Below are positions 13,170-39,900 of a DNA stretch of 43,850 nt, piece by piece. Where the stretch lies: NCBI RefSeq assembly GCF_006345805.1, contig NW_021834963.1, positions 1 through 43,850 on the forward strand. Reading direction: 5' to 3'. Under the pieces are notes generated by a model. That model was not told the DNA's origin. It saw nothing but the letters and a program-made list of their open reading frames with translations, and did no database searches. The stretch comes from Octopus sinensis (lineage: Eukaryota). The position numbers and the translations under genes are program-made. The stretch's first letter is position 1. Each line of letters opens with the position of its first letter.

Positions 13170-14434
13170 TTGATCTGCGTGGATATGTCTATGTGGTGTT
13201 GATTTAGTTGTTATGTCTGAAGGCCTTGCTATGTTGTTGCTGTTCTCTTTTCTGGTATAACTTATATTATTTGTGGTGTTATTCATATCTATAAAACAGT
13301 CCTTTGACGAAAATTTTATGCACATTTTGCTTTGGAGGTTAATGGCAGCCAAACCGAGGCAAGGATCGAGCTGAAAATTGGCAAGGATACTAAATGCGTG
13401 GTGAGAATGAGACCCGCGATGGTTAAAATTCGCAAGCTATAAGATGTGGTTGCTATGGCAAAAAGAGTGATTTTTTTGATCCCTCTATAACGACGTCTCT
13501 CTGTCACTCTTTCTTCCACCACCTCTCTCACTGTACGTCTGTCTGTATCTATAGACAGAAAGCGATGACAACCGCAAAAGTTTAAATATTCTCGCCACAG
13601 GTCTTTTAGAACGGTGAATTAATATCGCCCACCTCCATCGCACAATCATAACAGATATTATTAAACAGATATATTGTGTTAATTTATATATATACTGTGT
13701 GCATATGTGGTTGGATTGTGCTAAAAATATGCACACCTATGTTAAAAGTGCTAGCGAGTTTGTATTGGAACTTCGAATTTGCTCAATTGAAAGGCATGGA
13801 CTCTAGGGCAAAATTCCTCATCTTTTAAAATGTGGCCCGCTTAGACCCGAATGAAATCGGGTTATAATACCAAAACGAGTAAAACAATAATAAACTATTT
13901 TAATTCCGAACAAGGCCGGGTATGTATTTCTAATCTATCAAATGAAGAAGGCGAACGATGATACAAATTGGATTTTTATGTAAAAAGATGTGTAATTGGG
14001 CCTGGAAGGGGATTACAATTTAAAAGAGGGGGTAACTTGCGGTGAGAAATTGTTTGAGAGACTTTTGGGGCGCTACTGTGGTCGTTTTGGTGTGAAAATA
14101 GGGGTTTTATTGATTTTGGGGGACAATTGAGGGTTTAGATTGGACACCTTTTGCCCGATTTCAATCAAATTTTCAACATGGTAAAGTAGAAGATTTGTAA
14201 TTTAAGCACGGAAATCTAATTTTTTTATAAATGAGAGATAGATAGATAGAGAAAGATAAAAAGCAAGAGAAAGTGAGGGAGAGTCCGAGATAAAGGAAGA
14301 GTAAGAGAGTGTGGATGCGAGAGAGAAAGGAGAGAGGAACAAAGAGGGTGAATATGGCGATAAGAAACAAAGGAAGCAACAGAAAGTAACAATCACACCC
14401 TCACCCACGCGTAGAGCGGGTCACCTTAAGCTAG
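13170..14434. mobile_element. Unclassified interspersed repeat cluster, possibly Helitron-derived
   Basis: A plus-strand imperfect GC hairpin at 14404-14420 is followed by CTAG|T at 14431-14435. The internal sequence was not recognised. Confidence 0.35.
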
Positions 14435-14940
14435 TACTTATATGTACAATACTCTTCCGTAAGTATTTCTCTTGCTATGGCCATTTGGCTTTATCAAGCC
14501 AGTTGTAGAGATAGGTTCTTGTTGGTTTGTTGTCTTTCATTATTGTGACATTTCTGTCCTTATATTTTGTATATTTGACTTGATGTTATAATAACTTTAT
14601 ATTGTGTTTTTATTGAATAGTTTGTGACATTTGTGATTGGCAAGTAAATATTTACTCATTAAATATCATTGTTAAGCAATAACGTTGACCACTAATGTGC
14701 GTTTTGTTCAATATAATGATCATAATTTTTGTCTTAATGTAGAGCGTAAAGTAAAAACAAATGATAATGAAAAGTGGACTCAACTAAGAGATGATGTAAG
14801 AAATCAACGCTGTGTGAATAGTTTAATCACTGGGGAAACAAACTATGTGAAAATGTAGTTGAACTGTTGTGTAATTTGGGGTACCTTTGTATATGTTTGT
14901 GTAATCTTTAACTCATCATTTTATATTTCATCATTTGTAG

Positions 14941-15116
14941 TTCTGCGTAGAGCTGAAACTGGGAAACGAAGAAAGGTGCTCTGGTGTGGTAGTTGCCAGC
15001 TACCTAGCCCACCACGGGGCCAACTTTTACTGTAAAAACAAAATTGGCAGAACACCATTGGACCTAATAGAAGAGGAAGATTTAAAAAAGATGTTAAAGA
15101 CGTTATTCTCACCGCA
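14941..15116 (+). CDS. Second exon (last ankyrin-like repeat and linker) of the ANK-RING-DD gene
   Basis: tttgtag|TTC...CCG CA|gtaagt, 176 nt, phase 0-2. FCVELKLGNEERCSGVVVASYLAHHGANFYCKNKIGRTPLDLIEEEDLKKMLKTLFSP contains the L..HGA....N..G.TPLDL motif. Confidence 0.9.
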
Positions 15117-15654
15117 GTAAGTATTCACTGGCAATGACAAGATAAACCATTACATTTTCTGTTTTGTATATAACCATGTTTATATGTTTCTATTGTTTTA
15201 ATTCTACTGATACATTATACTGTCTTAGTAGCTTAATGAAAGGTTAGACAACAACAGTAAGAAGAACAATAAACAATATGCAGATGTTAAGCTAATTAAA
15301 AGAAAGGACACTATTTTGATTACATTCAAATGATTGGTTGCGTTGACTGTTATACCTCTCCTAAAATCCCCACCCACCTCTCTCAATTCCCTATTTTAAA
15401 GATTTGGGACGAATGAGAAAATGTAGAAGTAAATAGTGAAGTGATGGAATTTATCTGTCTACCAACAGATTGTTCCTCTGTTTTCTCTGTCCCACCCAGT
15501 CATGTCCATGTGAGCTATCCTGAGAAAATCGCCTACAAACACATACAATGAGTGTACATACATGGATACATACATACATACATACGTATTTATACATGCA
15601 TACATAGATACATACATGTATATATATATATATATACATATATATACATATATA

Positions 15655-16064
15655 GGCGCAGGAGTGGCTGTGTGGTAAGAAGCTTGTTTACCAACCACAT
15701 GGTTCCGGGTTCAGTCCCACTGTGTGGCACCTTGGGCAAGTGTCTTCTACTATAGCCTTGGGCCGACCAAAGCCTTGTGAGTGGATTTGGTAGACGGAAA
15801 CTGAAAGAAGCCCGTCGTATATATGTATATATATGTATGTGTGTGTATGTTTGTGTGTCTGTGTTTGTCCCCCTAGCATTGCTTGACAACCAATGCTGGT
15901 GTGTTTATGTCCCCGTCACTTAGCGGTTCGGCAAAAGAGACCGATAGAATAAGTACTGGGCTTACAAAGAATAAGTCCCGGGGTCGTGTTACTCGATTAA
16001 AGGCGGTGCACCAGCATGGCCGCAGTCAAAATGACTGAAACAAGTAAAAAGAGAAAAGAGAGAA

Positions 16065-16065
<1 letters not shown>
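15655..16065 (+). mobile_element. tRNA-derived SINE with internal (TA)n(TG)n tract (octopus-type; family not verified)
   Basis: A-box-like TGGCTGTGTGG and B-box-like GGTTCAGTCCC; shares core and gactgaaacaagtaaaa tail with copies at 21657, 27755 and 28350. Confidence 0.88.
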
Positions 16066-16114
<49 letters not shown>

Positions 16115-16137
16115 TATATATATTATATATATATATA

Positions 16138-17639
16138 CTGTGGGGAGGAAATAAATATTCGTCTGTCAAAATTCTTTATTTAATTTCTAATGAACATAAA
16201 TGGGATATACCAATACTATATTTGCATATACATGCATAAACTAAGAATATGCAAAAGAAACTAATAAATTATAGTAACTAATGAATTTATATACAATCAT
16301 AAATATTTAGGGGTGAAAAAAGTATTCGTACAGAATAAATGTATGATTTTCTATGCCACAAAATACTGTTAAAATATTTTTTTACTAGAAATTTCTTGTT
16401 TATTCCAATAATCTTATCAGTTTTCATTTTTGAGTGTCAAAACACTAGCTTCTTCATTCAGCACTGAGACAACATAAAGTGATATCGCAATAATGGCGAA
16501 AAGTAAAGAACTCGCAAATTCAGTGAAAAACTTAATTATTGAACTGTAGAAAGTAGGTAAAAATTACAGGAAAATATCAGAGACACTTTGTATTCCGCTT
16601 ACTACCATATCTTCATTTATTCAAAGATATAAGGAATCGGGAACTGTTGAAAACAGAATAAGATCCGGAGCACCACGCAAGATTTCCCCAAGATCTTTAA
16701 GAAAAATGAAGCGAAGAATCGGAAAAAAACGCAATAATCACCAGAAAGGAGTTTTCATAGGAATGAACTGAAGTCACGCTCTCCTAGAAAAACTCCTCTG
16801 TTGACTAAAAGGCATAGAGATGCCCGTTTAAAATTTGTTATGAACATAAAGATAAATCTGATACATTCTGGGAAAATGTTCTATGGACAGACGAGACGAA
16901 AATTGAATTGTTTGGACGAAATTCGCTTACCCATGTTTGGAGTAAAAACACAATTCCTACCGTAAAGATTGGAGGTGTGGGGGTGTTTCTCTGCAAATGG
17001 TACTGGCAATTGACATGTGATAGATGGTAGAATGAATGCAAGATGTACCAAAATATTTTGAACAATAATTTATGCGACTCTGTTGAAAAGCTCCAGCTTT
17101 GTGAAGGGTGGGTTTTACAACAGGGTAACGGCCCTAAGCACACGGTGAAGTCTACCAAATATGGATTGTCAATCACAATATAAAATTATTGTAATGGCCA
17201 AGCCTGTCACCTGACTTGAACCCCATTGAAAATTTGTGGCGTTATTTGAAAACTGAAATTCAAGAGCCCCAACATGCATTACAGATTTGAAGAAAATTTG
17301 TCAAGAAGAATAGGAAAAAATTCCTAAAGAAACATGCGAGTCATTGGTGAAGAACTACAAGAAGAGATTGGTTGAAGTGGAACTGAATAATGGTTATGCT
17401 ACGAAGTATCATATCAGAATTATCAGTTATTTATATTCTGCACGAATACTTTTTTCACCCCTAAATATTTATAATTTTATATAAATTCCTTAGTTACTAT
17501 AATTTATTAGTTTCTTTTGCATATTCTTAGTTTATGCATCTGTATGCAAATATTTAACAGTGGTATATCCCATTTATGTTCATTAGAAATTAAATAAATA
17601 AAGAATTTTGACATGCACGAATATTTATTTCCCCCCGTG
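16138..17639 (+). mobile_element. Full-length inactive Tc1-family (DD34E) DNA transposon with ~200-bp TIRs and TA target site
   Basis: TA|ctgtggggaggaaataaatattcgt ... acgaatatttatttccccccgtg|TA; TIRs about 16138-16338 and 17431-17639. Broken transposase from ATG 16493: MAKSKEL..., RSGAPRKIS, FWENVLWTDETKIELFG, QQGNGPKH (second catalytic D lost), WPSLSPDLNPIENLW. 34-residue spacing after repairing one frameshift. Confidence 0.93.
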
Positions 17640-17771
17640 TATATATATATATATATATAGAAATTCGGGATGAGTACTTGATAATTATAAGCACCTGTGT
17701 ATACCGTTTGGTGGTGTAGGTGGTGGAGTAAATTGATCAAAATAAAATAAAAACATGATGCGAAGGATTCA

Positions 17772-17849
17772 GCGGTACATATGTTTCGGGCCTTTATTAG
17801 ACAGATTTATAACAATGCATAATGTATGTCTGTGGCCTTCTTCAGCCGC
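17772..17849 (-). ncRNA. Type I hammerhead ribozyme candidate (left palindrome arm, mirror copy)
   Basis: Exact reverse complement of 18127-18204; predicted cut between 17776 and 17775. Confidence 0.75.
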
Positions 17850-18126
17850 GCACAACAGCTTCCACAAGGACATGTGTTACATCAAAAATTCTTGGTTGGG
17901 GATGCAAATCCTCTCATTCACGCACGACATAATGCGGCAGCAGCATAGAGTTGAAGCGTCCATCTCTTTCTTCTCTCAATGTAGAATGATTCTACATTGA
18001 GAGAAGAAAGAGATGGACGCTTCAACTCTATGCTGCTGCCGCATTATGTCGTGCGTGAATGAGAGGATTTGCATCCCCAACCAAGAATTTTTGATGTAAC
18101 ACATGTCCTTGTGGAAGCTGTTGTGC

Positions 18127-18204
18127 GCGGCTGAAGAAGGCCACAGACATACATTATGCATTGTTATAAATCTGTCTAATAAAGGCCCGAAACATATGTA
18201 CCGC
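18127..18204 (+). ncRNA. Type I hammerhead ribozyme candidate (right palindrome arm)
   Basis: Helix I GCGG/CCGC; core CUGAAGA 18131-18137; helix II A.C + GGCC/GGCC extended by ACAGA/UCUGU; GAAA 18189-18192; minimal helix III CAUAUG (palindromic); GUA triplet; predicted cut after 18200. Confidence 0.75.
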
Positions 18205-18372
18205 TGAATCCTTCGCATCATGTTTTTATTTTATATATATATATATAGATATATATACATATACGCACACACACACACACATACATATATATACATATAT
18301 ATATATATATAGGGAGAGTTTACGAAAAAAACAAAAGACGATGACAGGTGGTATTGAAGGAATAGAAAAAGT

Positions 18373-18408
18373 CTTTTACGTTTCGAGCCTTCGCTCTTCT
18401 ACAGAAAG
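18373..18408 (-). ncRNA. Minimal hammerhead-like motif with variant core (CUGUAGA) inside a short repeat (about 18310-18500)
   Basis: Minus strand reads CUUU-CUGUAGA-A-GAGC(GAAG)GCUC-GAAA-CG-UA-AAAG: helix I 4 bp, helix II 4 bp with tetraloop, helix III one pair with CG loop, A6 replaced by U. Confidence 0.55.
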
Positions 18409-18494
18409 GGACACGGAAAAAAAAACAAGGATAGAAACAAGGAGAGAAAAAAATGTGTGTAGCGGCTAACAATCTATCATGGCGACTGACTCGG

Positions 18495-18564
<70 letters not shown>

Positions 18565-18896
18565 ATATATATAAGTGAATTATATTTCTGGAATATATGT
18601 TGTTCACTTTGCGTAAATCAGTTTTTGTGATGTATCAATGTCATGACATATACTTATTAATATTTGTGTCCATTTATATATATATATGTGTGTGTATGTG
18701 TGTGTGTGTGTGTGCCTGTGTCTGTGTCTGTGTGTCTGTGTTTCTGTGTCTGCATTTATATACTCACAAATTCGCCCATATGTAATTGTTTAATTGTGGT
18801 GTCGCATAATATTCTCTACTGTAAATATGCACACAATGTAATATTTGTTATAAATGAATGTTATTAATGGGATGTGTTCATGTTTTTGTTCCTCAG

Positions 18897-19039
18897 ATGT
18901 GTGTTTTGTGAAGACGAAGTGGCCACAGAGACGTTCTTTCCATGTAAACATCTTTCGCTGTGTAAGAAATGCTGTCCCCAAAAGATACCTAAACAATGCC
19001 TCAAGTGTGGACAGAATATAACGAGCAAAAATAGTTTGG
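18897..19039 (+). CDS. RING finger exon (C3HC4, IAP/MIB-type spacing)
   Basis: cctcag|A TGT...TTG G|gtaag, 143 nt, phase 2-1, compatible with the previous exon. CVFCEDEVATETFFPCKHLSLCKKCCPQKIPKQCLKC = C-x2-C-x11-C-x-H-x3-C-x2-C-x8-C-x2-C. Confidence 0.92.
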
Positions 19040-19919
19040 GTAAGATCTGTCTGTTTGTCTCTTGGGCTTTATGGTGTGGAATATTGCATTTCATGTTGTT
19101 GTGTAGATCCAGTTCTGACTTAATCAAGCACACTTTTGATAAAAGATGTTCCAGGTGTCTTTTCTCTGTCATATTATGTCTCTCTCACTACTCCCACTAA
19201 ACATTGTTCTTGTCCAATTAGAAGACTTGTCACACTTCAAGATGGTTGCTTTCTGCAACATAAAAATAATAAAGAATACTGAATTATAAATGGTGACTAA
19301 ATACCAATAAATCACCAAGGTTCTATCAGTAAATACCGACATCTTGTGTGTGATTAGAGTGATTAATGATTTATCAATATCTTCGGAAGCCGATAATTAA
19401 AAACAACTGCATTTATATGAATATCAGAGTGAGCCTTTATAAAATAGGAGACTCAATAAGAAAATCTCAACTGAGGGTTTAGGGACCAACATTAGAGAGG
19501 GGACATCAAAAGGGTGGGAAACTTTGATTGATGTATAGATTAGTATTCCGAGTATCAGTTCTTCTGAACCGTTTCAAATATTTTCACAGCAATAATGCGT
19601 GGATGACAAGTTTTATGTCGTTAATGAGGTTTTGTGTGAATATAGTGTTTTAATTTAGGACACAAGATATCACTTCCTGTTAGACCTGATGTCACTTTCT
19701 GTTCGACCTGCTTTATTCAGGAGGATGAATGACATTGAAATATCTTCAGATATTTCCCCACATCTGATTACATTCTGGAGAACTGTGATGTGGGTAATTA
19801 AAATTAAAGATTACTAGTAGTAACCAATAACAAAGAGAGCAAGTGTATATATATATATACATATATATCTATCTATATATATATATATATAGAGAGAGAG
19901 AGATAGATAGATAGATATA

Positions 19920-20415
19920 TTGTTGTTTTTGGGAATGGTCATTTTGCCAGTTTAGCCAATAAAAACACACGCACTATATATTTGGTGTTACTTTGCTTCA
20001 GTCTTATTTATTTTTTACATTAATCTTAATCTTATTTCGGCCAAAAGCAAAAACAAATTACACGTACGTATATAAACAGAAGATACAAATATTACAGGCA
20101 CTTCAACCCCCCCCCACGCACACTAACTAAACATAGACACACATAAAGATATACGCATGCGCAAATGAAGACACGTACAATAGGAATACAAAATACAAAA
20201 GGGCTGATGGTTAGTAAGGAGAGACACACAAATAAGAAAGAAGAAAGCAAAGGACCACTGATGAGGTCACAGGAGTGTGATGAAAGAACTCTTGCCGAAA
20301 TAAGATTAAGATTAAAGTAAAAAATAAATAACGCTGAAGCAAAGTAACACTAAATATATAGTGCGTGTGTTTTTATTGGCTAAACTGGCAAAATGACCAT
20401 TCCTAAATACAACAA
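19920..20415. mobile_element. ~496-bp element with 122-bp terminal inverted repeats, TA-flanked, with an internal hammerhead-like motif (Penelope-like or MITE-like)
   Basis: TIRs 19920-20041 and 20294-20415 (gaatggtcattttgccagtttagccaataaaaacacacgcactatatattt and its reverse complement). CTGATGA-G-GTCACA(GGAG)TGTGAT-GAAA-GAAC-TC at 20258-20291. 23 bp of the TIR recur at 28304-28326. Confidence 0.75.
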
Positions 20416-20912
20416 TATCTGTTTCAACACACGATTTCACATCAAAAATCTTGCAAAACAAATAGATAGATATAGATATATATCCGTCTGGAAGTGGTGT
20501 GTCGTGTTTGAGGCTAGGACTTCGATGCTCAACTTGGTTGACACTGGATTTAAGCAGAAGATGAGACGAATGTTGATTAGAGATGTCTTGTCATAGATCT
20601 GGCACAAACATAAGAAAACCAAAACGAAGCTAAGAGAAAATCGGTTATTAGGGGATAATTAAATGAAATAATTTCAGAATTGTTAGAATTGTTGGATGAC
20701 TTAAGAGACAGAGAAGGGTTGTTAAGTGTAGTCTATTCTGTTGTGGACTTAAATATTGAACCATTACTTGGACCCACTGTAGAAAGCATACAAATGTTCT
20801 ACAAAAGCATGTTGTCATCAGTGATGACACGAATGTCTCACAATAATAAAATATCGATTATTAGAAAGGATAAAGAAATTTTACTAAAACCACTTTGAAA
20901 TGTATTTTTCAG

Positions 20913-20963
20913 TTGGTCCAAATTCGTCAAATATGGAAGTCCAGATGGTGGCAGGACCAGTTG
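20913..20963 (+). CDS. Short symmetric exon (51 nt, phase 1-1), a diverged copy of the first death-domain exon
   Basis: tttttcag|TT GGT...GTT G|gtgagt, open: (V)GPNSSNMEVQMVAGPV. Flanking introns are homologous to those of exon 23326-23397. Confidence 0.7.
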
Positions 20964-20994
20964 GTGAGTATGAAATAACTGTACCTAATTATGT

Positions 20995-21215
20995 TATCCC
21001 ATAAGAGGCATAGGGTTGGTTTCCCGGTTTCTCTAGCGTATACATTCCTCCCTGAATAGGACACTAGTTCGCTGTAAAATTACTTATTTTTGCCAGCTGA
21101 GTGAATGGAAGTGTTTTGCTCAAGAACGCACGTATTGCCTGGTGAAGGAATCGAAACCCCAATCTTACAATCATGAGTCAAATACCCTAACCATTAAGCC
21201 CTGCGCCTCCACTTG
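20995..21215 (-). mobile_element. tRNA-derived SINE (second family)
   Basis: Minus strand head agtggaggcgcagggcttaatggttagggtatttgactcatgattgtaagattggggtttcgattcc has A- and B-box-like motifs. It interrupts the duplicated intron segment. Confidence 0.7.
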
Positions 21216-21656
21216 CTATGACCAATTCGTTGCCATAAAACACAAGCAATGGAAAAATTTATAGAAATCAATGTACCTAACTGATTCCTATAAATTCTCC
21301 ACCCCCTGAGCTGTTTTGTTTGTCAGAAGGACTGAGAACAGGGCCCATCTCTAATCTCCATTTGAAATGTTAGCTGCAAAAGGAGTCGATGAAATATATC
21401 GCTGAAATTTCATAAAATCTTTGTTGCCTTGGATGGAAAAATGGATAAATTAGAAAACACAATAGAGTTAATATTGTCTTTTGGAACCAAGAACTAAGAT
21501 ATGTTGTTGTGTAGGGGTAAACAGGTGAACAGAAACTAGAAAAATGTGGACCAAAATCATAATGGTTACCAATTGACCATTGCTGATAGGAATGTCTCTC
21601 AATAATGTAACAAATTGCGTTTTTTGAAAGTTTAACTGTAAAGTAATTCTATTAAA

Positions 21657-21810
21657 GAGTGTCTGTGTGGTAAGTAGCTTGCTTACCGACCACATGGTTC
21701 CGGGTTCATTCCCACTGCGTGGCACCTTGGACAATTGTCTTCTACTATAGCCTCGGGCCGAGCAAGGCCTTTTGAGTGGATTTGGTAGACGGAAACAGAA
21801 ATAAACTCGT

Positions 21811-21853
<43 letters not shown>

Positions 21854-22077
21854 ATATGCTTGTGTGTCTGTGTTTGTTCCCCCAACATCACTTGACAACC
21901 GATGCTGGTTTGTTTACGTCCCCGTAACTTATTTGTTCGAGAAAAGAGACCAATAGAATAAGTACCAGGCTTACAAAGAATAAGTCCTGGGGTTGATATG
22001 CTCGACTAAAAGCGGTGCTCCAGCATGGCCACAGTCAGCTCACTGAAACAAATAAAAGAGTAAAGAGTAAAAGAGAG
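21657..22077 (+). mobile_element. tRNA-derived SINE (family of 15655)
   Basis: Collinear with 15655-16065, including the internal (TA)n(TG)n. Confidence 0.88.
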
Positions 22078-22149
22078 AAGACAGGAATCCCTGAATGTGT
22101 GGAACTTGCATTTTGAATCTGGGATGCGATAGAAGATACAAAGAAGAAC

Positions 22150-22790
22150 AAAAACGATTTGAATGTTGTATGGCTTGATCAGGTTAATGCTTATCGTTCT
22201 GTACTACACGAGTTGTTGCTGAAAACAACGGACGTCTTTTATATACGAGAAAAGATTGAGAATCTAATGAAGAGTTGCTGTAATAATTTCAAAATGTGCT
22301 TCAGGACAGAATATTTCACAACAGACTCGCATTGTCTGGAGACTGGAATTGCCGTGGGTTGCACAATATCAGTCATTTTGTTTGTACTTGTTATGGAAAT
22401 GTTTATTAGATCAGCAGATTGATCAGAAGAAATAACTCGAGTGAAGTCCCCTAAGACGACATTAATGGATGACATAAGAAAACAAACAACAGAGCAAAAG
22501 GATATGCAAATAGTTCTGAATAGACTGTATTAATTAATTAGTTGGTCAAGAATAGGGTGAAGGCAAATAAATGTTGCCGTCATTTGCCAAAGCTCAGCAG
22601 AAATAAGTGAAATTCAAAGTAGCAGAAGAAAGCATGTCAAAGGTTAAAGAGAAACTGTTTAGGGTGATGGTACACTACCTCATTGTCCCACAAGAGTAGA
22701 GGCATCGAGATAATAGCACAAAAAGAAGACATCTTATAAGCAATAGATAAGCCAAACTTTTGGGGAATAAAGGGTTTTAAAGAACTTCTT
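22150..22790 (+). mobile_element. Decayed RT fragment of an RLE-type non-LTR retrotransposon (NeSL/HERO-like)
   Basis: VVWLDQVNAYRSVLHELL and LETGIAVGCTISVILFVLVMEM, then LMDDI. These match the DL.NAYGSV.H, G...GC.IS..LF.L.ME and MDD RT motifs. Many stops. Confidence 0.7.
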
Positions 22791-23325
22791 TATTAAGGAG
22801 TCTTAAAATATTTCCTGAATCAGATGATGTTCTTGTGAACTGGGATGTGCGGAGTTACGATTCAAGATTACCAACATCAACCCTTAACAAAGATGTCAGG
22901 TGTATGTTTATCCTACATGAATTTGTCTGCCGTGTATTTGTGATTAGGTCTTTGGAAAAACACCTTGTTTGACATTAGAATTAAGCAGAAGATGAGAAAA
23001 ATGTTGGTGAGTGAAGTCATGTCACAGGTTTGGTACAGATATAAGAAGGGAAATAGAGAACTGTGAGAAAAATAGTCTTATCAAATGATAATTAAATGTG
23101 ATAAATGCAACATTGTTAGATTATGTAGGATGTCTTGATAGAGAGACGAAGTTTAAGAAGTTGAATCTATTTTGTTGTGGACCAAAATATTGAGCTATTA
23201 CATAGATTAAAAAGGTTGACCAAAATCATAGTGGTCACCAGTTGACCATTGATGATAAGCATGCCTCAAGAATAAAGATTAAGAAATTTAGTATAAATTA
23301 TAAAATTTGGAAATATTTATTTCAG

Positions 23326-23397
23326 AGAGTCCAGAGCTGAAGGAGAAGGATCTTCTGAGAGTGGCTAAGAGGTTAGGAAGAGATTGGTGGCAAGTAG
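23326..23397 (+). CDS. First death-domain exon
   Basis: tatttcag|AG AGT...GTA G|gtgagt, 72 nt, phase 1-1. (E)SPELKEKDLLRVAKRLGRDWWQV matches the L..vA..LG.DW..l/v death-fold helix 1-2 pattern. Confidence 0.85.
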
Positions 23398-23929
23398 GTG
23401 AGTATAAAATTACACTACCTAATTGATTTCTATAAATTTTACATTCACCTGGGCTATTTCATTTGTCAGGATGAAAGAGAACAGGTTACATTCCTAATTT
23501 CCAGTGGAATGGTTAGCTGCAAAATAAATTCTATTAATGATATTACTGGTATTTCATAAAGTATCCACTGAGGTTGGTAATTATGGATACACAAGAAAAT
23601 ACAAGTAGCATTTAATATTGGAAGAAAGAAGAAAAATATGTTAAGGGTAAACAGCTGAGTTAATGACAACGTTTTTGGTTCGTCTTTACTCCATCAAAAG
23701 ACCATGAGTTAGGGTCTTCTTGAAGCCATTAGGGATTGGGTTATTGTGTTTGAATGTGATAATTGCAATTTATATTGCCATATTGGAATAACTTTACAAC
23801 ATGACATATGTTTGTAAATGCTTCAGTAAAAACAGACTTAGTGTAGGGGTGACACAGCCAAATCATATCATATTCCCCACATCCAAAAAGAGAGAATGGC
23901 TTTAAGGAAATTTGACAGAAAATGAATAT

Positions 23930-24640
23930 TCACAAGTGAAGCCAGACCATGGCTGGTCTCTCTCTCTCACTGAGACATAAGAATAACTGAATGGGTTCAG
24001 GAGAATTGATTGAATCTGGAGTAGATTCAAAAAGGATTGGATTTGACTGAGAATAATCGACTGTTGGTCTATCATTATTCATTTGATTTTCAGTGTCATT
24101 TTGGGAACTTTGCAAGGTGATTGATTTCACAGAGAGACATTACTTTCATGACCTTTGAATATCAGATCTGAAATCTGCCAGATTAAGACAGATATATGGG
24201 ATTTCTCTGAAGGGTCTCTGGAGTAATGTTGCCCAATAGGATTTATAGTTCAGAGATTTGGGAGTCTCTCCAGGTTGAGCCACTTCTTCACATCTCTGGT
24301 ACCTAGGACATGTGATCAGAATGTCGCAGGAATGAATTACAAGACAGGTTCTCAAAGTCAAACCAATGGAGTAGGAGACCCAGGGGTAGACCAAGCAGTA
24401 AATAGTTGGATGATATCCATAGACTTAGTTGTTGATGCTTGGGAATCCAACCAAAATATGTAATGATGGTTACATCTGATAGGCCCCAATGGAAGAAATG
24501 CCAGGGGACTCTATCCCCACAACTATCCCAGAAATATTGAGCAGAGGAAATGAATGGATCAAATGGTTTGCCTGTTGGTACCCTATGTTGATTCTTTAGG
24601 TTCTCATGCACTTTTGCCTTCACAAACACATCTGCCATCG
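23930..24640 (-). mobile_element. Possible decayed retroelement ORF1-like fragment
   Basis: Overlapping broken minus-strand ORFs (RINIGYQQ..., YGYHPTIYC..., ILITCP) followed by an S/P/T-rich tail. Only weak resemblance to the ORF1 at 38640-39900. Confidence 0.25.
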
Positions 24641-24903
24641 GTTTACCTTAAAGATTCTCAAGTGTAAACTTCAATTAATGTTTTTTTTTAAATCACCTTT
24701 AATTTAACCACTTTGTTATTTTTCTCATCATCCCTAGAAATAGAAAACAATGTCTTATATTTTTCTTGTTTCTTAGCTATTTTTTTATATTTCTCTCTTG
24801 AAATAGTTTCTTTGTTATGTTTATAACAACACACATCTTTTATATTATTGTTAATATTGTTAAGGTTGGTTGCATTTATCTCTTATTGTTGTGTCTTTTG
24901 CAG

Positions 24904-25102
24904 CAATTTTTTTAGGAGTTGATACAACTAACTGAAAATTGATGATGAGTCTATTGACGCTGTAAAACAAGGCTATCTGATGCTTTACGAATGGTACAGG
25001 AATTGCGACCCAGAAACACGGACACACGCAACATTACGTGCAGCTCTTGAAGAAGCTGAATGTGTCGCTGCGATGGAATGTCTGTCATTAGACGCAAAGT
25101 GA
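24904..25102 (+). CDS. Terminal death-domain exon, frameshifted near 24930 in this sequence
   Basis: ttttgcag|CA ATT TTT TTA GGA GTT GAT ACA ACT AAC TGA gives (A)IFLGVDTTN* (stop 24933-24935). The shifted frame reads LKIDDESIDAVKQGYLMLYEWYRNCDPETRTHATLRAALEEAECVAAMECLSLDAK* (stop 25100-25102), matching the ..ML..W....t...L..AL death-domain pattern. Confidence 0.8.
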
Positions 25103-28769: not shown

Positions 28770-29374
28770 TAAGTAATACTAAGCAATAAAGGGTTTAGCA
28801 ACGAATTGCCTTACCACACCGATTTAGAAATAGCAGTCAAAGAGTTATAGCTATTTCTCTACTAAAAAGGGAGATCTCAGTAAAAACAGCAATTGAAGGC
28901 AGACACAAACAGGTAAGAGAGAATGAATGACGGCAATCTATCATACAATTTTAAGTTATCTACGGACGTACGTTTCGAAATCAAGTTTTTAGGAAAGCAT
29001 AAGAATTAAATATTAAATAATTCTATCTTACCAAAAACTTCTTTTCTCTTCAGCGTAGAATACTATAATCATAATGATTATATATTGAATTTTGAGATAC
29101 TAGAAGGCACCAACTCACTCAGTATCAGAGCGAGCTAGAACCCGCAACTAGTATCACCAAATTCAATGCTTGAATGAAAGGATTGTGTCACCAGCCCCTT
29201 CCCACCCGCGTGTAGCCAAAACATATGCTGTGGTCATCTACTGATATAAAATATGGTTATCCGTAATAATGAAGGGTGAAATTAATTAATTTGGAATAAT
29301 TATCAATTACACCAAGTAGTCTTCGGCATGTAAAAGCCTCATTCGAGGAAATTTAAGTAATACTAAGCAATAAA
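28770..29374 (-). mobile_element. Retrozyme / Penelope pLTR-like non-coding unit (~584-bp period, 21-bp terminal redundancy)
   Basis: taagtaatactaagcaataaa occurs at 28770-28790 and 29354-29374. It contains a canonical hammerhead, has no ORF in the track, and has TA-rich flanks. Confidence 0.75.
28959..29059 (-). ncRNA. Canonical type I hammerhead ribozyme
   Basis: Helix I UCUACG/CGUAGA (6 bp); core CUGAAGA 29053-29047; long helix II (GAAA/UUUC, AAGUUUUU/AAAAACUU, AGAAUUA/UAAUUCU); GAAA 28976-28973; helix III with palindromic CGUACG; GUC triplet; predicted cut between 28965 and 28964. Confidence 0.9.
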
Positions 29375-30764: not shown

Positions 30765-30864
30765 ACACTCACCGGTAAAATTCCCACTTTTTTCTTCTTT
30801 TTATTGTCCTAAAATTTTCGTTGTGTCTTGCAACCTATATACATATGTATGTGTATATAATATA

Positions 30865-30903
<39 letters not shown>

Positions 30904-30975
30904 TATATATATATATGTTGTATGTATATACATATAATATTATATATATATATAATATATATATATATATATTTA

Positions 30976-31012
<37 letters not shown>

Positions 31013-31024
31013 CATATATATATA

Positions 31025-31067
<43 letters not shown>

Positions 31068-31125
31068 ATATAGGTTGCAAGTACAATAAAAATAAGAAAA
31101 AAGTGGGAATTTTACCGGTGAGTGT
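30765..31125. repeat. Inverted repeat (about 55-75-bp arms) enclosing a (TA)n tract
   Basis: acactcaccggtaaaattcccacttttt...cttgcaacctata and tataggttgcaag...aaaaagtgggaattttaccggtgagtgt. The same family occurs at about 26245-26310. Confidence 0.85.
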
Positions 31126-31140
31126 GTTATATTATAACAT

Positions 31141-31810
31141 CCGAAAGGATGAAAGGCAAAGTCGACCTCGGCGGAATTTGAACTCAGAACGTAACGGCAG
31201 ACGAAATACCTATTTCTTTACTACCCACAAGGGGCTAAACACAGACGGGACAAACAAGGACAGACAAACGGATTAAGTCGACTATATCGACCCCAGTGCG
31301 TAACTGGTACTTATTTAATGGACCCCGAAAGGATGAAAGGCAAAGTCGACCTCGGCGGAATTTGAACTCAGAACGTAACGGCAGACGAAATACCTATTTC
31401 TTTACTACCCACAAGGGGCTATACACAGAGGGGACAAACAAGGACAGACAAACGGATTAAGTCGTCTGTATCGACCCCAGTGCGTAACTGGTACTTATTT
31501 AATGGACCCCGAAAGAATGAAAGGCAAAGTCGACCTCGGCTGAATTTGAACTCAGAACGTAACGGCAGACGAAATACCTATTTCTTTACTACCCACAAGG
31601 GGCTAAACACAGAGAGGACAAACAAGAACAGACAAACGGATTAAGTCGTCTATTTCGACCCCAGTGCGTAACTGGTACTTATTTAATGGACCCCGAAAGA
31701 ATGAAAGGCTAAGTCGACCTCGGCGGAATTTGAACCCAGAACGTAAAGGCAGAGGAAATACTGGTAAGCATTTCGCCCGGCGTGCAAACGTTTCTGCCAG
31801 CTCGCGCCTT
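31141..31810 (-). repeat. SINE-derived tandem array, 184-bp unit, about 3.6 copies
   Basis: ccgaaag recurs at 31141, 31325, 31509 and 31693. The last unit continues into the SINE head (gcatttcgcccggcgtgcaaacgtttctgccagctcgc). Confidence 0.92.
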
Positions 31811-34025: not shown

Positions 34026-34315
34026 TTATTTTTATTTTATCTAGTTTCATCTCACGAGCTGTGACCATGCTGGGGCACCACCATTCTGCTGGGGCACCGC
34101 CATTATATATAGATAGATAGATAGATAGATTTATCTCTCTGTCTAAATGGAATAAGTATAAAAATGAATATTGTCAATTTAATTAAAAAGTCCATATGTG
34201 GCTGAAGAGTGCTTTACATTTTAAATCTGATGTAATACTTACATTGTTTAATTAAATGAAGTAGCATGAAACGATTGTACTACACTACCTTTGGATATCC
34301 TTGTTGCTTGTATTG

Positions 34316-34370
<55 letters not shown>

Positions 34371-38639: not shown

Positions 38640-39900
38640 TCCCCATTTTTGGGTGAAATAGAGGAACAACGAATAGGCAGTTACGCCACGGTGGCGGGCA
38701 AAAGCCTGCCAGCTGACATTCTGCGATTGAAAGAATTGGTATTGAAGCAGAAGGATTTCGGAAAGTACAAGGATTATTTAAAAAAGAGGGAGACTGCCTT
38801 AGGCTGATACCCCCGGGAGAAGCGATGGAAAGAGCAGAGAGGAAAATAATAATATACAGAATGCTGGATGTAGAAACAAAAAGAGTGGAAGTAGCAGATG
38901 AATGCCTGAGCGAAGTGAAGGGAGTAACGACGTTTTATACTCTCGGGAAGGAAGTACGGCACGGTGGAGGTTCACTTCGTGAACGAGGAGGAAACGAAAA
39001 AGTACTCCACGATGCTGTTGAGATCAGCCAGGTGGGCACTTTTGCCAACCTAATGTGGTAAAAGAGTGGCAAGAGTACAGATAGGGAGAGTGCCACCCAA
39101 AATAGAGGAGGAATGGCTGTTGGAAGCTATCCTGTACAACTGTGAGGAGGAGACCAAGATTATCAAGGTGGCAAAATTGGCTGAGATAAACTGATGGGGA
39201 TTTAGACTGGAAATCTTGGTCCATATAACCCTGCCTGACTTGCACAAGATAGCAGAGGAGTTGGTGCTCCCTGATGACACCCGGTTGAGAATTGTGGTGG
39301 AGGGGAAGCCTCCAATATGTTATAATTGCGGTACAAGAGGACACATGAAGGCAAGGTGTCCCCAGAGACGAGGAAAGAACGGAGAACTAAGCAGAGGTGG
39401 AGGAAGTAATAGTGGTGGAGGAAAAGGAGGAGGAAATAGGGGGCAGAAAAAGAAAAACAATGCGGAGTCACGCCCAAAACTGAAAAAGAAGAAAAAAGCG
39501 GTAAAAGTACAAGAGAAAAAATTAGTAGAGAAAAGAGACGAGTGAAAATCGAACCCCAGAGCCAACAACAAGAAGGAGAGAAGAAATAGACAAAGAGGAG
39601 AAATGATGGGAGTGGAAAGGGGAAGTAAGGAGGAGAATGGAATATGTGAGGCAAAGAAAGCAGCCGACTGAATGATGATAATTTGCGATAAGATTGTGTG
39701 AATTGAGGAAAAGATTGCAAAGGTGAAGAATTTAATAAGAGTAAGACTGGATGAAGAGGTGTTTGGTAGCGAGGAAAGAGCAGTACTGTTGGAGAGAGAG
39801 AGAGTCGAGAAATTGACAGAATTGTTTGGAACAAGAATAAGGAAAACTGGACTGTACATTTCAAAGAAAGCAACGAGAATGAAATTCTTTGAAAAACCAA
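38640..39900 (+). mobile_element. Decayed LINE ORF1/gag-like gene (RRM-like region plus CX2CX4HX4C zinc knuckle), no adjacent ORF2
   Basis: KYGTVEVHFVNEEE...RVARVQIGRVPPKIEEEWLLEAIL...RLRIVVEGKPPICYNCGTRGHMKARCP, with in-frame stops, followed by a K/E-rich tail. Confidence 0.75.

What the first reader, a model, noticed from the sequence alone, without database searches (positions are those of the whole stretch)
17660..18234. Perfect 493-bp palindrome carrying a hammerhead ribozyme on each strand
Seen: 246-bp arms around a single central G (17988), with no mismatch noticed. Each strand has GCGG-CUGAAGA-AGGCC...GGCCC-GAAA-CAUAUG-UA-CCGC near the distal end. About 80 bp of extra unique sequence (17660-17741) extends the left arm, and both outer ends meet (TA)n. 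Known: ribozymes in both polarities typify viroid-like RNAs, and inverted terminal copies typify Penelope-like insertions. Inferred: a very young fold-back insertion made by template switching during target-primed reverse transcription. Transcription in either direction gives a 246-bp perfect dsRNA plus a latent ribozyme. A spacerless palindrome can also be a sequencing or amplification chimera, although the diverged analogue at 10271-10728 favours a real class.
Basis: partly seen in the sequence, partly recalled or inferred. Interest (0 to 1): 0.9.

Follow-up and report, generated by a model that had tools for sequence, protein, structure and literature searches.

The report
Young fold-back ribozyme retroelement in octopus intron
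A 575-bp piece of mobile DNA carrying a hammerhead-ribozyme motif landed recently in a TA-repeat inside an octopus gene intron as two mirror-image copies joined head to head; it is a clean, very young example of a pattern already known for Penelope-like retroelements, not a new kind of element or a sequencing error.

Summary
Arms 17742-17987 and 17989-18234 are perfectly complementary (246 nt, 0 mismatches) around G17988. Each arm carries the same type-I hammerhead-like motif (18127-18204 +, 17772-17849 -).

The window is Octopus DNA. The palindrome lies in an intron of a MIB2-like gene. It is also present, still perfect, in a non-identical O. sinensis GenBank contig. A ~95% paralogous segment has an uninterrupted (TA)n at the site, so 17660-18234 is an insertion that includes the 82-nt extension.

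A second family copy elsewhere is 73% identical. It shares the 3' end next to (TA)n and conserves the ribozyme core completely. It is also folded back at the same unit position, with a shorter, ~85-90% identical second arm. At least four more head-to-head hammerhead pairs occur in ~135 kb of octopus sequence.

Best reading: a short hammerhead-bearing, Penelope-like (PLE)-type retroelement unit integrated into (TA)n, with the inverted arm made at integration by template switching at the unit's 5' end. The one-sided extension matches the PLE "tail".

Not shown: ribozyme activity (no Rfam hit), the autonomous partner, and the exact switching step. A new member of a known kind; moderate interest.

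The parts
17640..17659 (.). Left remnant of the target (TA)n microsatellite
   Evidence: Read directly. It is continuous with the right (TA)n in the paralogous empty site L003 2180-2300. It is one TA unit shorter in the second assembly record L001.
17660..17741 (-). 82-nt 3' extension ('tail') of the long arm; sense strand is the - strand; the element's canonical 3' terminus is at 17660
   Evidence: Absent from the right arm. Homologous at 68% to the 3' end of the independent copy in L002, which also ends ...GATTT|(TA)n. Predicted conserved stem-loop 17741->17677 with an AC-rich 5' side. Absent from the paralogous empty site.
17742..17987 (-). Left arm: unit positions 1-246 of the long (328-nt) copy, sense on the - strand
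   Evidence: Perfect complement of 17989-18234. Aligns over its whole length with the L002 copy.
17772..17849 (-). Hammerhead-like motif of the left arm (type I, minimal palindromic helix III); predicted cut after A17776 reading the - strand
   Evidence: Descriptor hit. CM R1 gives 25.9 bits, E about 8e-4. Core conserved in the L002 copy.
17988..17988 (.). Single central G: junction of the two unit 5' ends
   Evidence: The centre aligns with the fold-back centre of the L002 copy (17611-17622).
17989..18234 (+). Right arm: unit positions 1-246, sense on the + strand; ends 34 nt after the ribozyme cut site, exactly at the 5' base of the tail stem-loop
18127..18204 (+). Hammerhead-like motif of the right arm: GCGG/CUGAAGA/A-GGCC..GGCC-C/GAAA/CAUAUG/UA/CCGC; predicted cut after A18200
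   Evidence: No Rfam hit.
18235..18311 (.). Right remnant of the target (TA)n(CA)n microsatellite
   Evidence: Colinear with L003 2182-2300.

Best explanation
Window 17660-18234 is one recent integration of a short (~330-nt), non-coding, hammerhead-bearing retroelement unit of the Penelope-like-element (PLE) / animal-retrozyme type. It sits in a (TA)n microsatellite in an intron of an Octopus MIB2-like gene.

The unit has a defined 5' end, ~138 nt of 5' sequence, a type-I minimal hammerhead, and then 116 nt ending in an AC-rich stem-loop.

Inferred mechanism:
1. First-strand cDNA was primed on nicked AT-rich target DNA at the distal 3' site (17660).
2. It was copied to the 5' end of the RNA (17987).
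3. There the polymerase switched template onto cDNA, either its own nascent strand or a second cDNA primed from the other target strand. This produced the inverted arm (17989-18234).
4. The inverted arm was joined to the other side of the (TA)n, 82 nt short of the full 3' end.

The one-sided 82 nt is the counterpart of the PLE 'tail'.

The resulting genomic copy is probably inert as a ribozyme. One transcript carries only one sense motif, and that motif is sequestered in a 245-bp perfect duplex with its antisense. The duplex does place a long perfect dsRNA hairpin in the host pre-mRNA.

Shown: palindrome, insertion, target, family, conserved core, fixed fold-back point, recurrent class. Inferred: RNA intermediate, PLE machinery, the template switch, ribozyme activity.
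For: **Insertion.** The joined flanks align colinearly to paralog L003 2019-2406, which has an uninterrupted (TA)n(CA)n. The flanks are ~95% identical while the arms are 100% identical.

**Reality.** The same perfect palindrome is in GenBank contig VCDQ01007368.1. That contig differs from the window by 17 substitutions and 34 indels over 21.2 kb, including a TA-unit difference and an A/G in the tail.

**Family.** L002 ~17490-17961 is an independent copy at another (TA)n site.
- It has the same 3' terminus.
- Identity by segment: ribozyme 3' half 20/20; GGCUGAAGAAGGC 13/13; 5' region ~41%; helix II interior ~39%; tail 68%.
- It has one compensatory pair (C-G to U-A) and one wobble-preserving change.

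**Fixed fold-back point.** The short inverted arm of the L002 copy (~127 nt, ~85-90% identical to its partner) starts at the position that aligns with the window's centre. It ends before the ribozyme. Arms are much more alike within a copy (100%, ~85-90%) than between copies (~41% in that region), so each fold-back arose after the lineages split.

**Termini are not inverted repeats of each other.** One end is constant and the other variable, as in retroelements.

**Class.** There are further head-to-head hammerhead pairs.
- Window 10271-10728.
- L002 17009-17338: 2-nt spacer, 80%.
- L002 15718-16631: 98%; Rfam HH9 E = 9e-5 per arm.
- L003 14246-14995: 99%; absent from the window's (TA)n at 30836-31072.

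**Literature match.**
- PLE insertions are 5'-truncated, often with an adjacent inverted copy, a 30-40-bp tail at one end only, a (TA)n / microsatellite bias, and hammerheads in the pLTR (PMC8557442).
- The Anolis PLE nicks and extends both strands at AT-rich DNA. It starts reverse transcription at two internal sites in an AC-rich stem-loop ~90 nt 3' of the ribozyme cut, and the tail is the stretch between them (PMC11167929).
- PLE minimal hammerheads have a 4-5-bp helix I, an extra nucleotide after A9 and a palindromic helix III. In Schistosoma they occur as pairs 100-700 bp apart on opposite strands (PMC4209133).
- PLEs are annotated among active octopus transposable elements (PMC13282606).
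Against: - No reverse transcriptase / GIY-YIG ORF is in or near the element, and I could not search the octopus genome for an autonomous partner with a matching pLTR / ribozyme / tail.
- Rfam's hammerhead models do not detect this motif. Its 10.1/11.1 position is A/C rather than the canonical G-C, and helices I and II are only 4 bp. Cleavage is untested.
- The tail is 82 nt, not 30-40 nt.
- Only two family copies were available, so 'fixed 5' end' rests on n = 2 plus a suggestive second family.
- A 1-nt spacer is sterically awkward for simple intramolecular snap-back.
- Both assembly records could derive from the same individual or reads, and polishing can homogenise palindrome arms.
Confidence: 0.7

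Rival explanations
1. The master element is itself palindromic. Its RNA already contains both arms, and ordinary 5' truncation of the cDNA gives second arms of different lengths (246 nt here, ~127 nt in L002).
For: Both copies fold back at the same unit position, and the variable end is the one opposite the fixed 3' terminus. This is what 5' truncation of a hairpin-containing template would give.
Against: Arms within a copy (100%; ~85-90%) are far more similar than the same region between copies (~41%). Palindromic masters would therefore need continuous arm homogenisation. A second family occurs both as a solo unit and as a palindrome whose centre lies near the solo's 5' end. A perfect 246-bp RNA hairpin is a poor template and a Dicer/ADAR substrate.
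Confidence: 0.12
2. A solo 328-bp insertion was later turned into a palindrome at the DNA level, by replication-fork template switching or by fold-back repair of a break.
For: Palindromes can arise this way. The right junction lies in A/T-rich sequence (TTTTATTTTA|TATA), which offers microhomology with (TA)n.
Against: A random break would not hit the same unit position in two independent copies. It would also not repeatedly hit the 5' ends of other hammerhead units. Both outer ends lie precisely at the microsatellite, as expected for a single integration event.
Confidence: 0.08
3. Assembly, amplification or sequencing chimera.
For: Spacerless perfect palindromes are a known artefact type. The arms are suspiciously perfect. 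The two records may share reads.
Against: The palindrome is bounded at 246 nt, with different unique flanks on each side and an asymmetric 82-nt extension. It is present in a second non-identical record. The same architecture exists in diverged form, which no artefact produces: ~85-90%, 80% and 72% arms.
Confidence: 0.03
4. A fold-back / MITE-type DNA transposon inserting at TA.
For: It has long inverted repeats and a TA-rich target. A Tc1-like element with 120-nt TIRs lies just upstream at 16218-17553.
Against: The element's actual termini (17660 GAAATTCGGG... and ...TTTTATTTTA 18234) are not inverted repeats of each other. The two family copies share only one terminus. The conserved hammerhead and the one-sided tail are retroelement / PLE traits. 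The Tc1 TIR ends 107 bp before the insert.
Confidence: 0.03

Closest known systems
Truncated / solo-pLTR insertions of Penelope-like elements (PLEs) with minimal hammerheads (Cervera & de la Pena 2014, PMC4209133; Craig et al. 2021, PMC8557442; Frangieh et al. 2024, PMC11167929)
   Same: - Type-I hammerhead with a 4-bp helix I, an extra nucleotide after A9 and a palindromic helix III (ACAUAUGU).
- Head-to-head inverted copies.
- An extension at one end only.
- Insertion into (TA)n / AT-rich DNA.
- The 3' end lies ~35-116 nt downstream of the ribozyme cut, around an AC-rich stem-loop.
- Pairs of motifs on opposite strands a few hundred bp apart.
   Different: - No RT / GIY-YIG ORF and no direct pLTR tandem at this locus.
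- The tail is 82 nt, not 30-40 nt.
- The inverted partner starts at the unit's 5' end and is truncated at its 3' side. The literature describes an inverted 5'-truncated copy.
- The spacer is a single base and the arms are identical.
- 10.1/11.1 reads A/C instead of G-C.
Animal non-LTR retrozymes (Cervera & de la Pena 2020, PMC7229834; Li, Clavereau & Pollet 2026 preprint, 10.64898/2026.07.22.740005)
   Same: A short (~170-400 nt) non-coding unit with a type-I hammerhead that needs dimerisation. Retrozymes are proposed to be non-autonomous derivatives of PLE pLTRs.
   Different: Retrozymes are head-to-tail tandem arrays whose unit boundary is the ribozyme cut site, and they yield circRNAs. Here there is no direct tandem, the unit's 5' end is 212 nt upstream of the cut site, and the two copies are inverted, so no unit-length self-cleaved RNA can be released from one transcript.
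L1 'twin priming' inversions and RT snap-back / end-to-end template jumping (from my own knowledge: Ostertag & Kazazian 2001; Bibillo & Eickbush 2002-2004)
   Same: An inverted arrangement created during target-primed reverse transcription, involving the second target strand or a template switch at the RNA 5' end.
   Different: Twin priming inverts a different (upstream) part of the RNA and does not duplicate the same segment. Here the same 246 nt are present twice. The enzymes involved here are unknown.

Membership tests
Hammerhead ribozyme, type I (PLE-type minimal variant) | Conserved core boxes C3-U4-G5-A6-N7-G8-A9 and G12-A13-A14, and a cleavage site U16.1-H17 | tested here: met
   CUGAAGA ... 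GAAA ... UA at 18131-18137, 18189-18192 and 18199-18200. Identical in the 73%-identical L002 copy.
Hammerhead ribozyme, type I (PLE-type minimal variant) | Helices I and II flanking the core, supported by covariation | tested here: met
   RNAalifold recovers 4-bp helices I and II. One pair changes C-G to U-A and one changes C-G to U-G between the two copies. Across 10 other octopus motifs the covariation score is 0.79 against 0.22 for shuffles, though partly biased by how they were found. Only two sequences of this family were available.
Hammerhead ribozyme, type I (PLE-type minimal variant) | Minimal helix III that is palindromic, allowing dimers (positions 15.x-16.x) | tested here: met
   A-CAUAUG-U is the perfect palindrome ACAUAUGU. 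The other octopus loci have CGUACG, CAAUUG, and CGAUUG / CGGUCG, each one base from the palindrome CGAUCG.
Hammerhead ribozyme, type I (PLE-type minimal variant) | Canonical G10.1-C11.1 pair closing helix II | tested here: inconclusive
   The register supported by the compensatory change leaves A18138 / C18188 as a non-standard 10.1/11.1 pair. An alternative register gives G-C but needs a bulged C. 6 of 10 other octopus motifs also lack a standard pair here.
Hammerhead ribozyme, type I (PLE-type minimal variant) | Score at or above Rfam gathering threshold (RF00163 / RF02275 and relatives) | tested here: not met
   No hit at gathering, or at E<=10 on 131 nt. Related octopus loci reach only sub-threshold hits: RF00163 20.9 bits, E = 0.008; RF02275 27.8 bits, E = 9e-5. 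A local model built without this family gives 25.9 bits, E about 8e-4.
Hammerhead ribozyme, type I (PLE-type minimal variant) | Self-cleavage | not testable with these tools
   Needs in vitro transcription. PLE minimal hammerheads are reported as weak, dimer-dependent or protein-assisted.
Penelope-like element (PLE) insertion | ORF with a telomerase-like RT plus a GIY-YIG endonuclease | tested here: not met
   The 575-bp insert has only an 81-codon ORF with no homologue, and the 3' reading frame is not conserved in the L002 copy. At best this is a non-autonomous or severely truncated PLE-type unit. The autonomous partner could not be searched for.
Penelope-like element (PLE) insertion | Complex inverted arrangement of copies at one insertion | tested here: met
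   Head-to-head arms here and in the L002 copy. Described for PLEs in PMC8557442.
Penelope-like element (PLE) insertion | 'Tail' extension at only one end, related to alternative RT start sites at an AC-rich stem-loop downstream of the ribozyme | tested here: met
   The 82 nt are on one side only. They are homologous in the L002 copy, and the two 3' ends bracket a predicted AC-rich stem-loop. The length differs from the published 30-40 bp.
Penelope-like element (PLE) insertion | AT-rich / (TA)n microsatellite target | tested here: met
   The empty paralogous site is (TA)n(CA)n. The L002 copy and the 34-kb solo copy also sit in (TA)n.
Penelope-like element (PLE) insertion | Direct pseudo-LTRs (partial tandem) | tested here: not met
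   No direct repeat of the unit in the window.
Animal non-LTR retrozyme | Head-to-tail tandem repeats, each with a hammerhead, giving unit-length circRNA | tested here: not met
   Only inverted copies, with no tandem. circRNA is not testable here.
MITE / fold-back DNA transposon | Terminal inverted repeats at the true element ends, shared by family copies | tested here: not met
   The ends at 17660 and 18234 are not complementary, because of the 82-nt asymmetry. The family copies share one end only.

The most novel reading that the evidence does not exclude
Head-to-head dimers joined exactly at the unit's 5' end, here through a single extra G that could be cap-derived, may be the natural footprint of a PLE-specific integration pathway: both target strands primed, followed by an end-to-end template jump. 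In octopus this pathway would continually seed long perfect dsRNA hairpins inside introns, feeding the ADAR-editing or small-RNA machinery of coleoid cephalopods.
Probability: 0.15. Interest if true: 0.6.

Novelty: new member of a known kind. Interest (0 to 1): 0.35.

Why it matters
The locus is an unusually clean natural specimen. It has zero arm divergence, an empty paralogous site, a second diverged family copy and a one-sided tail. Together these let one read off how hammerhead-bearing PLE-type units integrate: a fixed 3' start region around an AC-rich stem-loop, a (TA)n target, and an inverted second arm beginning at the unit's 5' end. This supports, from genomic data in a mollusc, the in vitro picture obtained for a lizard PLE. 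It also suggests a census that could test template jumping at the RNA 5' end.

In practice it flags a 245-bp perfect intronic hairpin in a MIB2-like gene, a candidate dsRNA source and a fragile site. It also shows that Rfam hammerhead models miss the long-helix-II octopus variants.

Tried and rejected
**Searches that led nowhere**
- Rfam at gathering threshold on the whole window and on four octopus contigs: nothing.
- Rfam E-value scans of the palindrome: only spurious miRNA-hairpin matches caused by the perfect stem, and none on the motif alone.
- Exact look-up and homology search of the 81-aa arm ORF: nothing, so I treat it as a spurious ORF.
- DNA pattern scans of JGI metagenome and IMG/VR contigs, with a copy-specific 21-mer and with a family-level gapped pattern: 0 hits. 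These collections are essentially not octopus.
- O. vulgaris orthologue look-ups (P0005, P0012) and two O. sinensis paralogues (P0001, P0008) were not on record. Presence or absence in the sister species could therefore not be tested.
- MAFFT on full-length hammerheads misaligned the cores. I used core-plus-stem mini-sequences for the model instead.

**Ideas rejected**
- Viroid-like dual-polarity ribozymes: it is the same motif mirrored.
- Twin priming: it would not duplicate the same segment.
- MITE: the termini are not inverted repeats.
- Part of the upstream Tc1-like element: its TIR ends at 17553.
- A coding 3' region: the frame is not conserved between the copies.

Full report
**1. The observation**

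Reading 17500-18400 and extending base by base from G17988 shows perfect complementarity out to 17742/18234. The first mismatch is 17741/18235. The arms are 246 nt, the spacer is one base, and the total is 493 bp, exactly as reported.

Only four inverted repeats of at least 100 nt with a spacer of at most 1.5 kb exist in the 43.85-kb window. This is the only perfect one. As RNA, the 575-nt block folds into a single ~245-bp hairpin (-490.7 kcal/mol, z = -46).

The quoted motif is at 18127-18204 (+), with its mirror at 17772-17849 (-). The 82 unique bases (17660-17741) and the (TA)n on both outer sides are also as described.

**2. Is the hammerhead motif real?**

Rfam finds nothing at gathering threshold. 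It also gives no hammerhead hit for this motif at E<=10 on 751 or 131 nt. The many miRNA 'hits' are artefacts of the perfect stem.

Three lines of evidence nevertheless support the motif.

- **Rarity of the descriptor.** The descriptor is: helix I of at least 4 bp, CUGANGA, closed helix II, GAAA, 6-nt loop, UH. It is expected 0.0075 times per window on both strands (0 of 400 simulations when the loop must be palindromic). It occurs at three independent loci. With one core substitution allowed it occurs at four loci, against 0.027 expected. One of these, 28959-29059 (-), hits Rfam RF00163 at E = 0.008.
- **An independent local model.** A covariance model built only from ten other octopus hammerheads, excluding this family, matches both arms full length at 25.9 bits, E about 8e-4. 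It matches the family copy in L002 at 23 bits. No unrelated hit falls below E = 0.01 in 135 kb.
- **Conservation within the family** (section 5).

The motif fits the published 'minimal' PLE hammerhead: helix I of 4-5 bp, an extra nucleotide after A9, and a palindromic helix III that implies dimers (PMC4209133).

Its weak points are an A/C at 10.1/11.1 in the register favoured by covariation and very short stems. Activity is untested. 'A ribozyme on each strand' simply restates the palindrome; it is one motif.

**3. Where this is**

Two exons in the window match 'E3 ubiquitin-protein ligase MIB2-like' proteins of Octopus sinensis (up to 100%) and O. vulgaris (98%).

Exons of this + strand gene map to 11157-11369, 14944-15159, 18895-19038 (RING), 20912-20977, 23328-23405 and 24932-25099. 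The palindrome therefore lies in the intron between 15159 and 18895.

**4. It is a real insertion**

GenBank contig VCDQ01007368.1 (O. sinensis, locus L001) aligns to window 13906-35091 with 17 substitutions and 34 small indels. These include one fewer TA unit at 17640 and an A/G at 17670 in the extension. The contig contains the identical, still perfect palindrome.

A paralogous segment, L003 (contig VCDQ01005870.1), is ~95% identical on both sides. It runs straight through an uninterrupted (TA)n(CA)n where the window has 17660-18234. The window's joined flanks align colinearly to L003 2019-2406.

So the insert is 575 bp, includes the 82-nt extension, and landed in a (TA)n. With 0 differences in 246 bp, it is much younger than the ~5% paralogue divergence. 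One caveat: precise loss from L003 by slippage between the flanking (TA)n tracts cannot be strictly excluded.

**5. A second family member**

Contig VCDQ01011147.1 (L002) carries an independent copy at ~17490-17961, at a different site. It again lies between two (TA)n tracts and is about 71-73% identical to the window's unit over the aligned 3' two-thirds.

It aligns along the whole 328-nt 'long arm plus extension' and ends at the same terminus (...GA(A)TTT|(TA)n). The extension is therefore part of the element, and 17660 is its canonical 3' end.

Identity by segment:

| Segment | Identity |
|---|---|
| 5' region | 41% |
| Hammerhead 5' half | 81% (GGCUGAAGAAGGC 13/13) |
| Helix II interior | 39% |
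| Hammerhead 3' half (GCCCGAAACAUAUGUACCGC) | 20/20 |
| Post-cut 30 nt | 73% |
| Tail | 68% |

RNAalifold on the two motifs returns the three-way junction, with one compensatory pair (C-G to U-A) and one wobble-preserving change.

**6. The fold-back point is fixed**

The L002 copy is also head to head. A ~127-nt inverted arm (17616->17490) is ~85-90% identical to the first ~140 nt of its sense arm. It ends at (TA)n before reaching the ribozyme.

Its centre (17611-17622) aligns, within a few bases, with the window's centre. So two independent insertions fold back at the same unit position, with second arms of different length (127 and 246 nt).

Arms are far more alike within a copy than between copies, so each fold-back was generated, or regenerated, per insertion.

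The element's true ends are not inverted repeats of each other. Only the 3' terminus is shared between copies. This is retroelement behaviour, not that of a DNA transposon.

**7. A recurrent class**

In the window plus four other octopus contigs (~135 kb) there are further head-to-head hammerhead pairs.

- Window 10271-10728: arms 72.5% identical, both with CACC-CCGAUGA...GAAAC(N4)GUU-GUGAUG, a U4C variant. It is shared with paralogues and therefore old.
- L002 17009-17172 / 17175-17338: 2-nt spacer, 80%. It is the same family as the solo copy at window 34197-34284, which sits between TA/GATA repeats.
- L002 15718-16139 / 16210-16631: 98%, 70-nt spacer. Each arm hits Rfam HH9 at E = 9e-5.
- L003 14246-14485 / 14756-14995: 99%. 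It lies within a ~1.07-kb block that is absent from the window's (TA)n at 30836-31072, a reciprocal empty site.

Diverged palindromes cannot be assembly artefacts, so the process that makes them is biological.

**8. Mechanism**

The anatomy matches what is published for Penelope-like elements.

- Insertions are 5'-truncated, often with an adjacent inverted copy. They have a 30-40-bp 'tail' at one end only, a microsatellite / (TA)n bias, and hammerheads in the pLTR (PMC8557442).
- In vitro, the Anolis PLE nicks and extends both target strands at AT-rich DNA. It starts reverse transcription at two internal sites in an AC-rich stem-loop ~90 nt downstream of the ribozyme cut, and the tail is the stretch between the two sites (PMC11167929).

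Here the two 3' ends lie 34 and 116 nt after the predicted cut. They bracket a predicted stem-loop conserved between the two copies, whose 5' side is AC-rich (CUCCACCACCUACACCACCAAAC). The stem-loop spans 17741->17677 on the - strand. There is no covariation for it, so this structure is weakly supported.

I infer the following steps:

1. cDNA synthesis was primed in (TA)n at the distal site.
2. Copying ran to the RNA 5' end.
3. The polymerase switched template onto cDNA, generating the inverted arm.
4. The inverted arm was joined to the other (TA)n side at A/T microhomology (TTTTATTTTA|TATA).

Whether the switch is onto the nascent strand or onto a second cDNA primed from the other strand cannot be decided. 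The 1-nt spacer argues against a simple intramolecular hairpin. The short L002 arm argues against two full independent cDNAs. The central G might be cap-derived; that is speculation.

**9. Consequences**

A transcript through the locus, in either direction, carries one sense motif plus its perfect antisense. The ribozyme is therefore buried in the duplex and lacks a cis partner for dimerisation. This copy is probably ribozyme-silent.

Because it is intronic and on the path of the host pre-mRNA, it supplies a 245-bp perfect dsRNA. That is a plausible ADAR or Dicer substrate and a fragile palindrome. This is inference only.

**10. Comparison and verdict**

The locus works like, and looks like, a truncated or non-autonomous PLE-type unit with a minimal hammerhead. 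Strict PLE membership (RT / GIY-YIG) is not met at this locus, and the partner could not be sought. Retrozyme membership fails (no tandem, no unit boundary at the cut site). MITE membership fails.

Pairs of PLE hammerheads on opposite strands were already noted in Schistosoma, and PLEs are annotated as active in octopus. This is therefore a new member of a known kind.

Its value is as a pristine specimen with an empty site, a tail and a fixed 5' junction. No step had to be referred.

Noticed in passing
window 10271-10728: Old head-to-head inverted pair (arms 72.5% identical). Each arm has a degenerate hammerhead-like motif: CCGAUGA (U4C) ... GAAAC-N4-GUU-GUGAUG. It is shared with paralogous contigs L002, L004 and L005, so it predates the gene-family duplications.
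   Followed up: partly
window 28959-29059 (- strand): Best canonical-looking hammerhead in the window: UCUACG/CUGAAGA/G..C/GAAA/CGUACG/UC/CGUAGA. The MFE fold equals the hammerhead shape (z = -2.6). Rfam RF00163 gives 20.9 bits, E = 0.008, below gathering because of a 70-nt helix II.
   Followed up: partly
window 34197-34284 (+), insert ~34136-34316: Solo hammerhead unit of another family, inserted between ATTATATATAGATAG... and ATTATATATATAT... microsatellite. The same family forms a 2-nt-spacer palindrome at L002 17009-17338.
   Followed up: partly
L003 14139-15211 vs window 30836-31072: A ~1.07-kb block with a 99%-identical head-to-head hammerhead pair (240-nt arms, 270-nt spacer, plus nested inverted pieces). 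It is present in the paralogue but absent from the window's (TA)n, a reciprocal presence/absence that suggests ongoing activity.
   Followed up: partly
L002 15718-16631: Inverted pair with 422-nt arms, 98% identical, 70-nt spacer, right end at (TA)n. Each arm hits Rfam Hammerhead_HH9 at 27.8 bits, E = 9e-5.
   Followed up: partly
window 16218-17553: Internally deleted Tc1/mariner-type element. It has 120-nt terminal inverted repeats (95%) at 16218-16337 / 17434-17553, and frameshifted transposase remnants (Pfam HTH_SB, HTH_Tnp_Tc3_2) at 16550-17027. It ends 107 bp before the palindromic insert.
   Followed up: partly
window 1-2613: Giant (TGA)n trinucleotide array of ~878 units at the window start.
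   Followed up: no
window 31141-31761: 184-bp tandem repeat x3.4 (96% identical), with a tRNA-like/SINE-like look. There are more copies in paralogue L003 15517-16691. No hammerhead motif in it.
   Followed up: no
window 19910-20041 / 20294-20425: Another inverted repeat (132-nt arms, 93%, 252-nt spacer) in the next intron. No hammerhead motif detected; possibly a MITE.
   Followed up: no
window 11157-25099 (+ strand): Host gene of the MIB2-like family (ankyrin repeats, RING, death-domain exon). The family is multi-copy in O. sinensis, with ~95% paralogous segments (L003) and 87-97% segments (L002).
   Followed up: partly
window 22117-22419; 39195-39542: Retroelement debris: an RVT_1 reverse-transcriptase fragment and a CCHC zinc-knuckle (gag-like) ORF. 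Not shown to be PLE-related.
   Followed up: no
octopus hammerheads generally (alignment A10): 6 of 10 octopus hammerhead motifs lack a standard 10.1-11.1 pair (often A/C or U/U). All have 45-77-nt helix II inserts. This explains why Rfam gathering thresholds miss all of them.
   Followed up: partly
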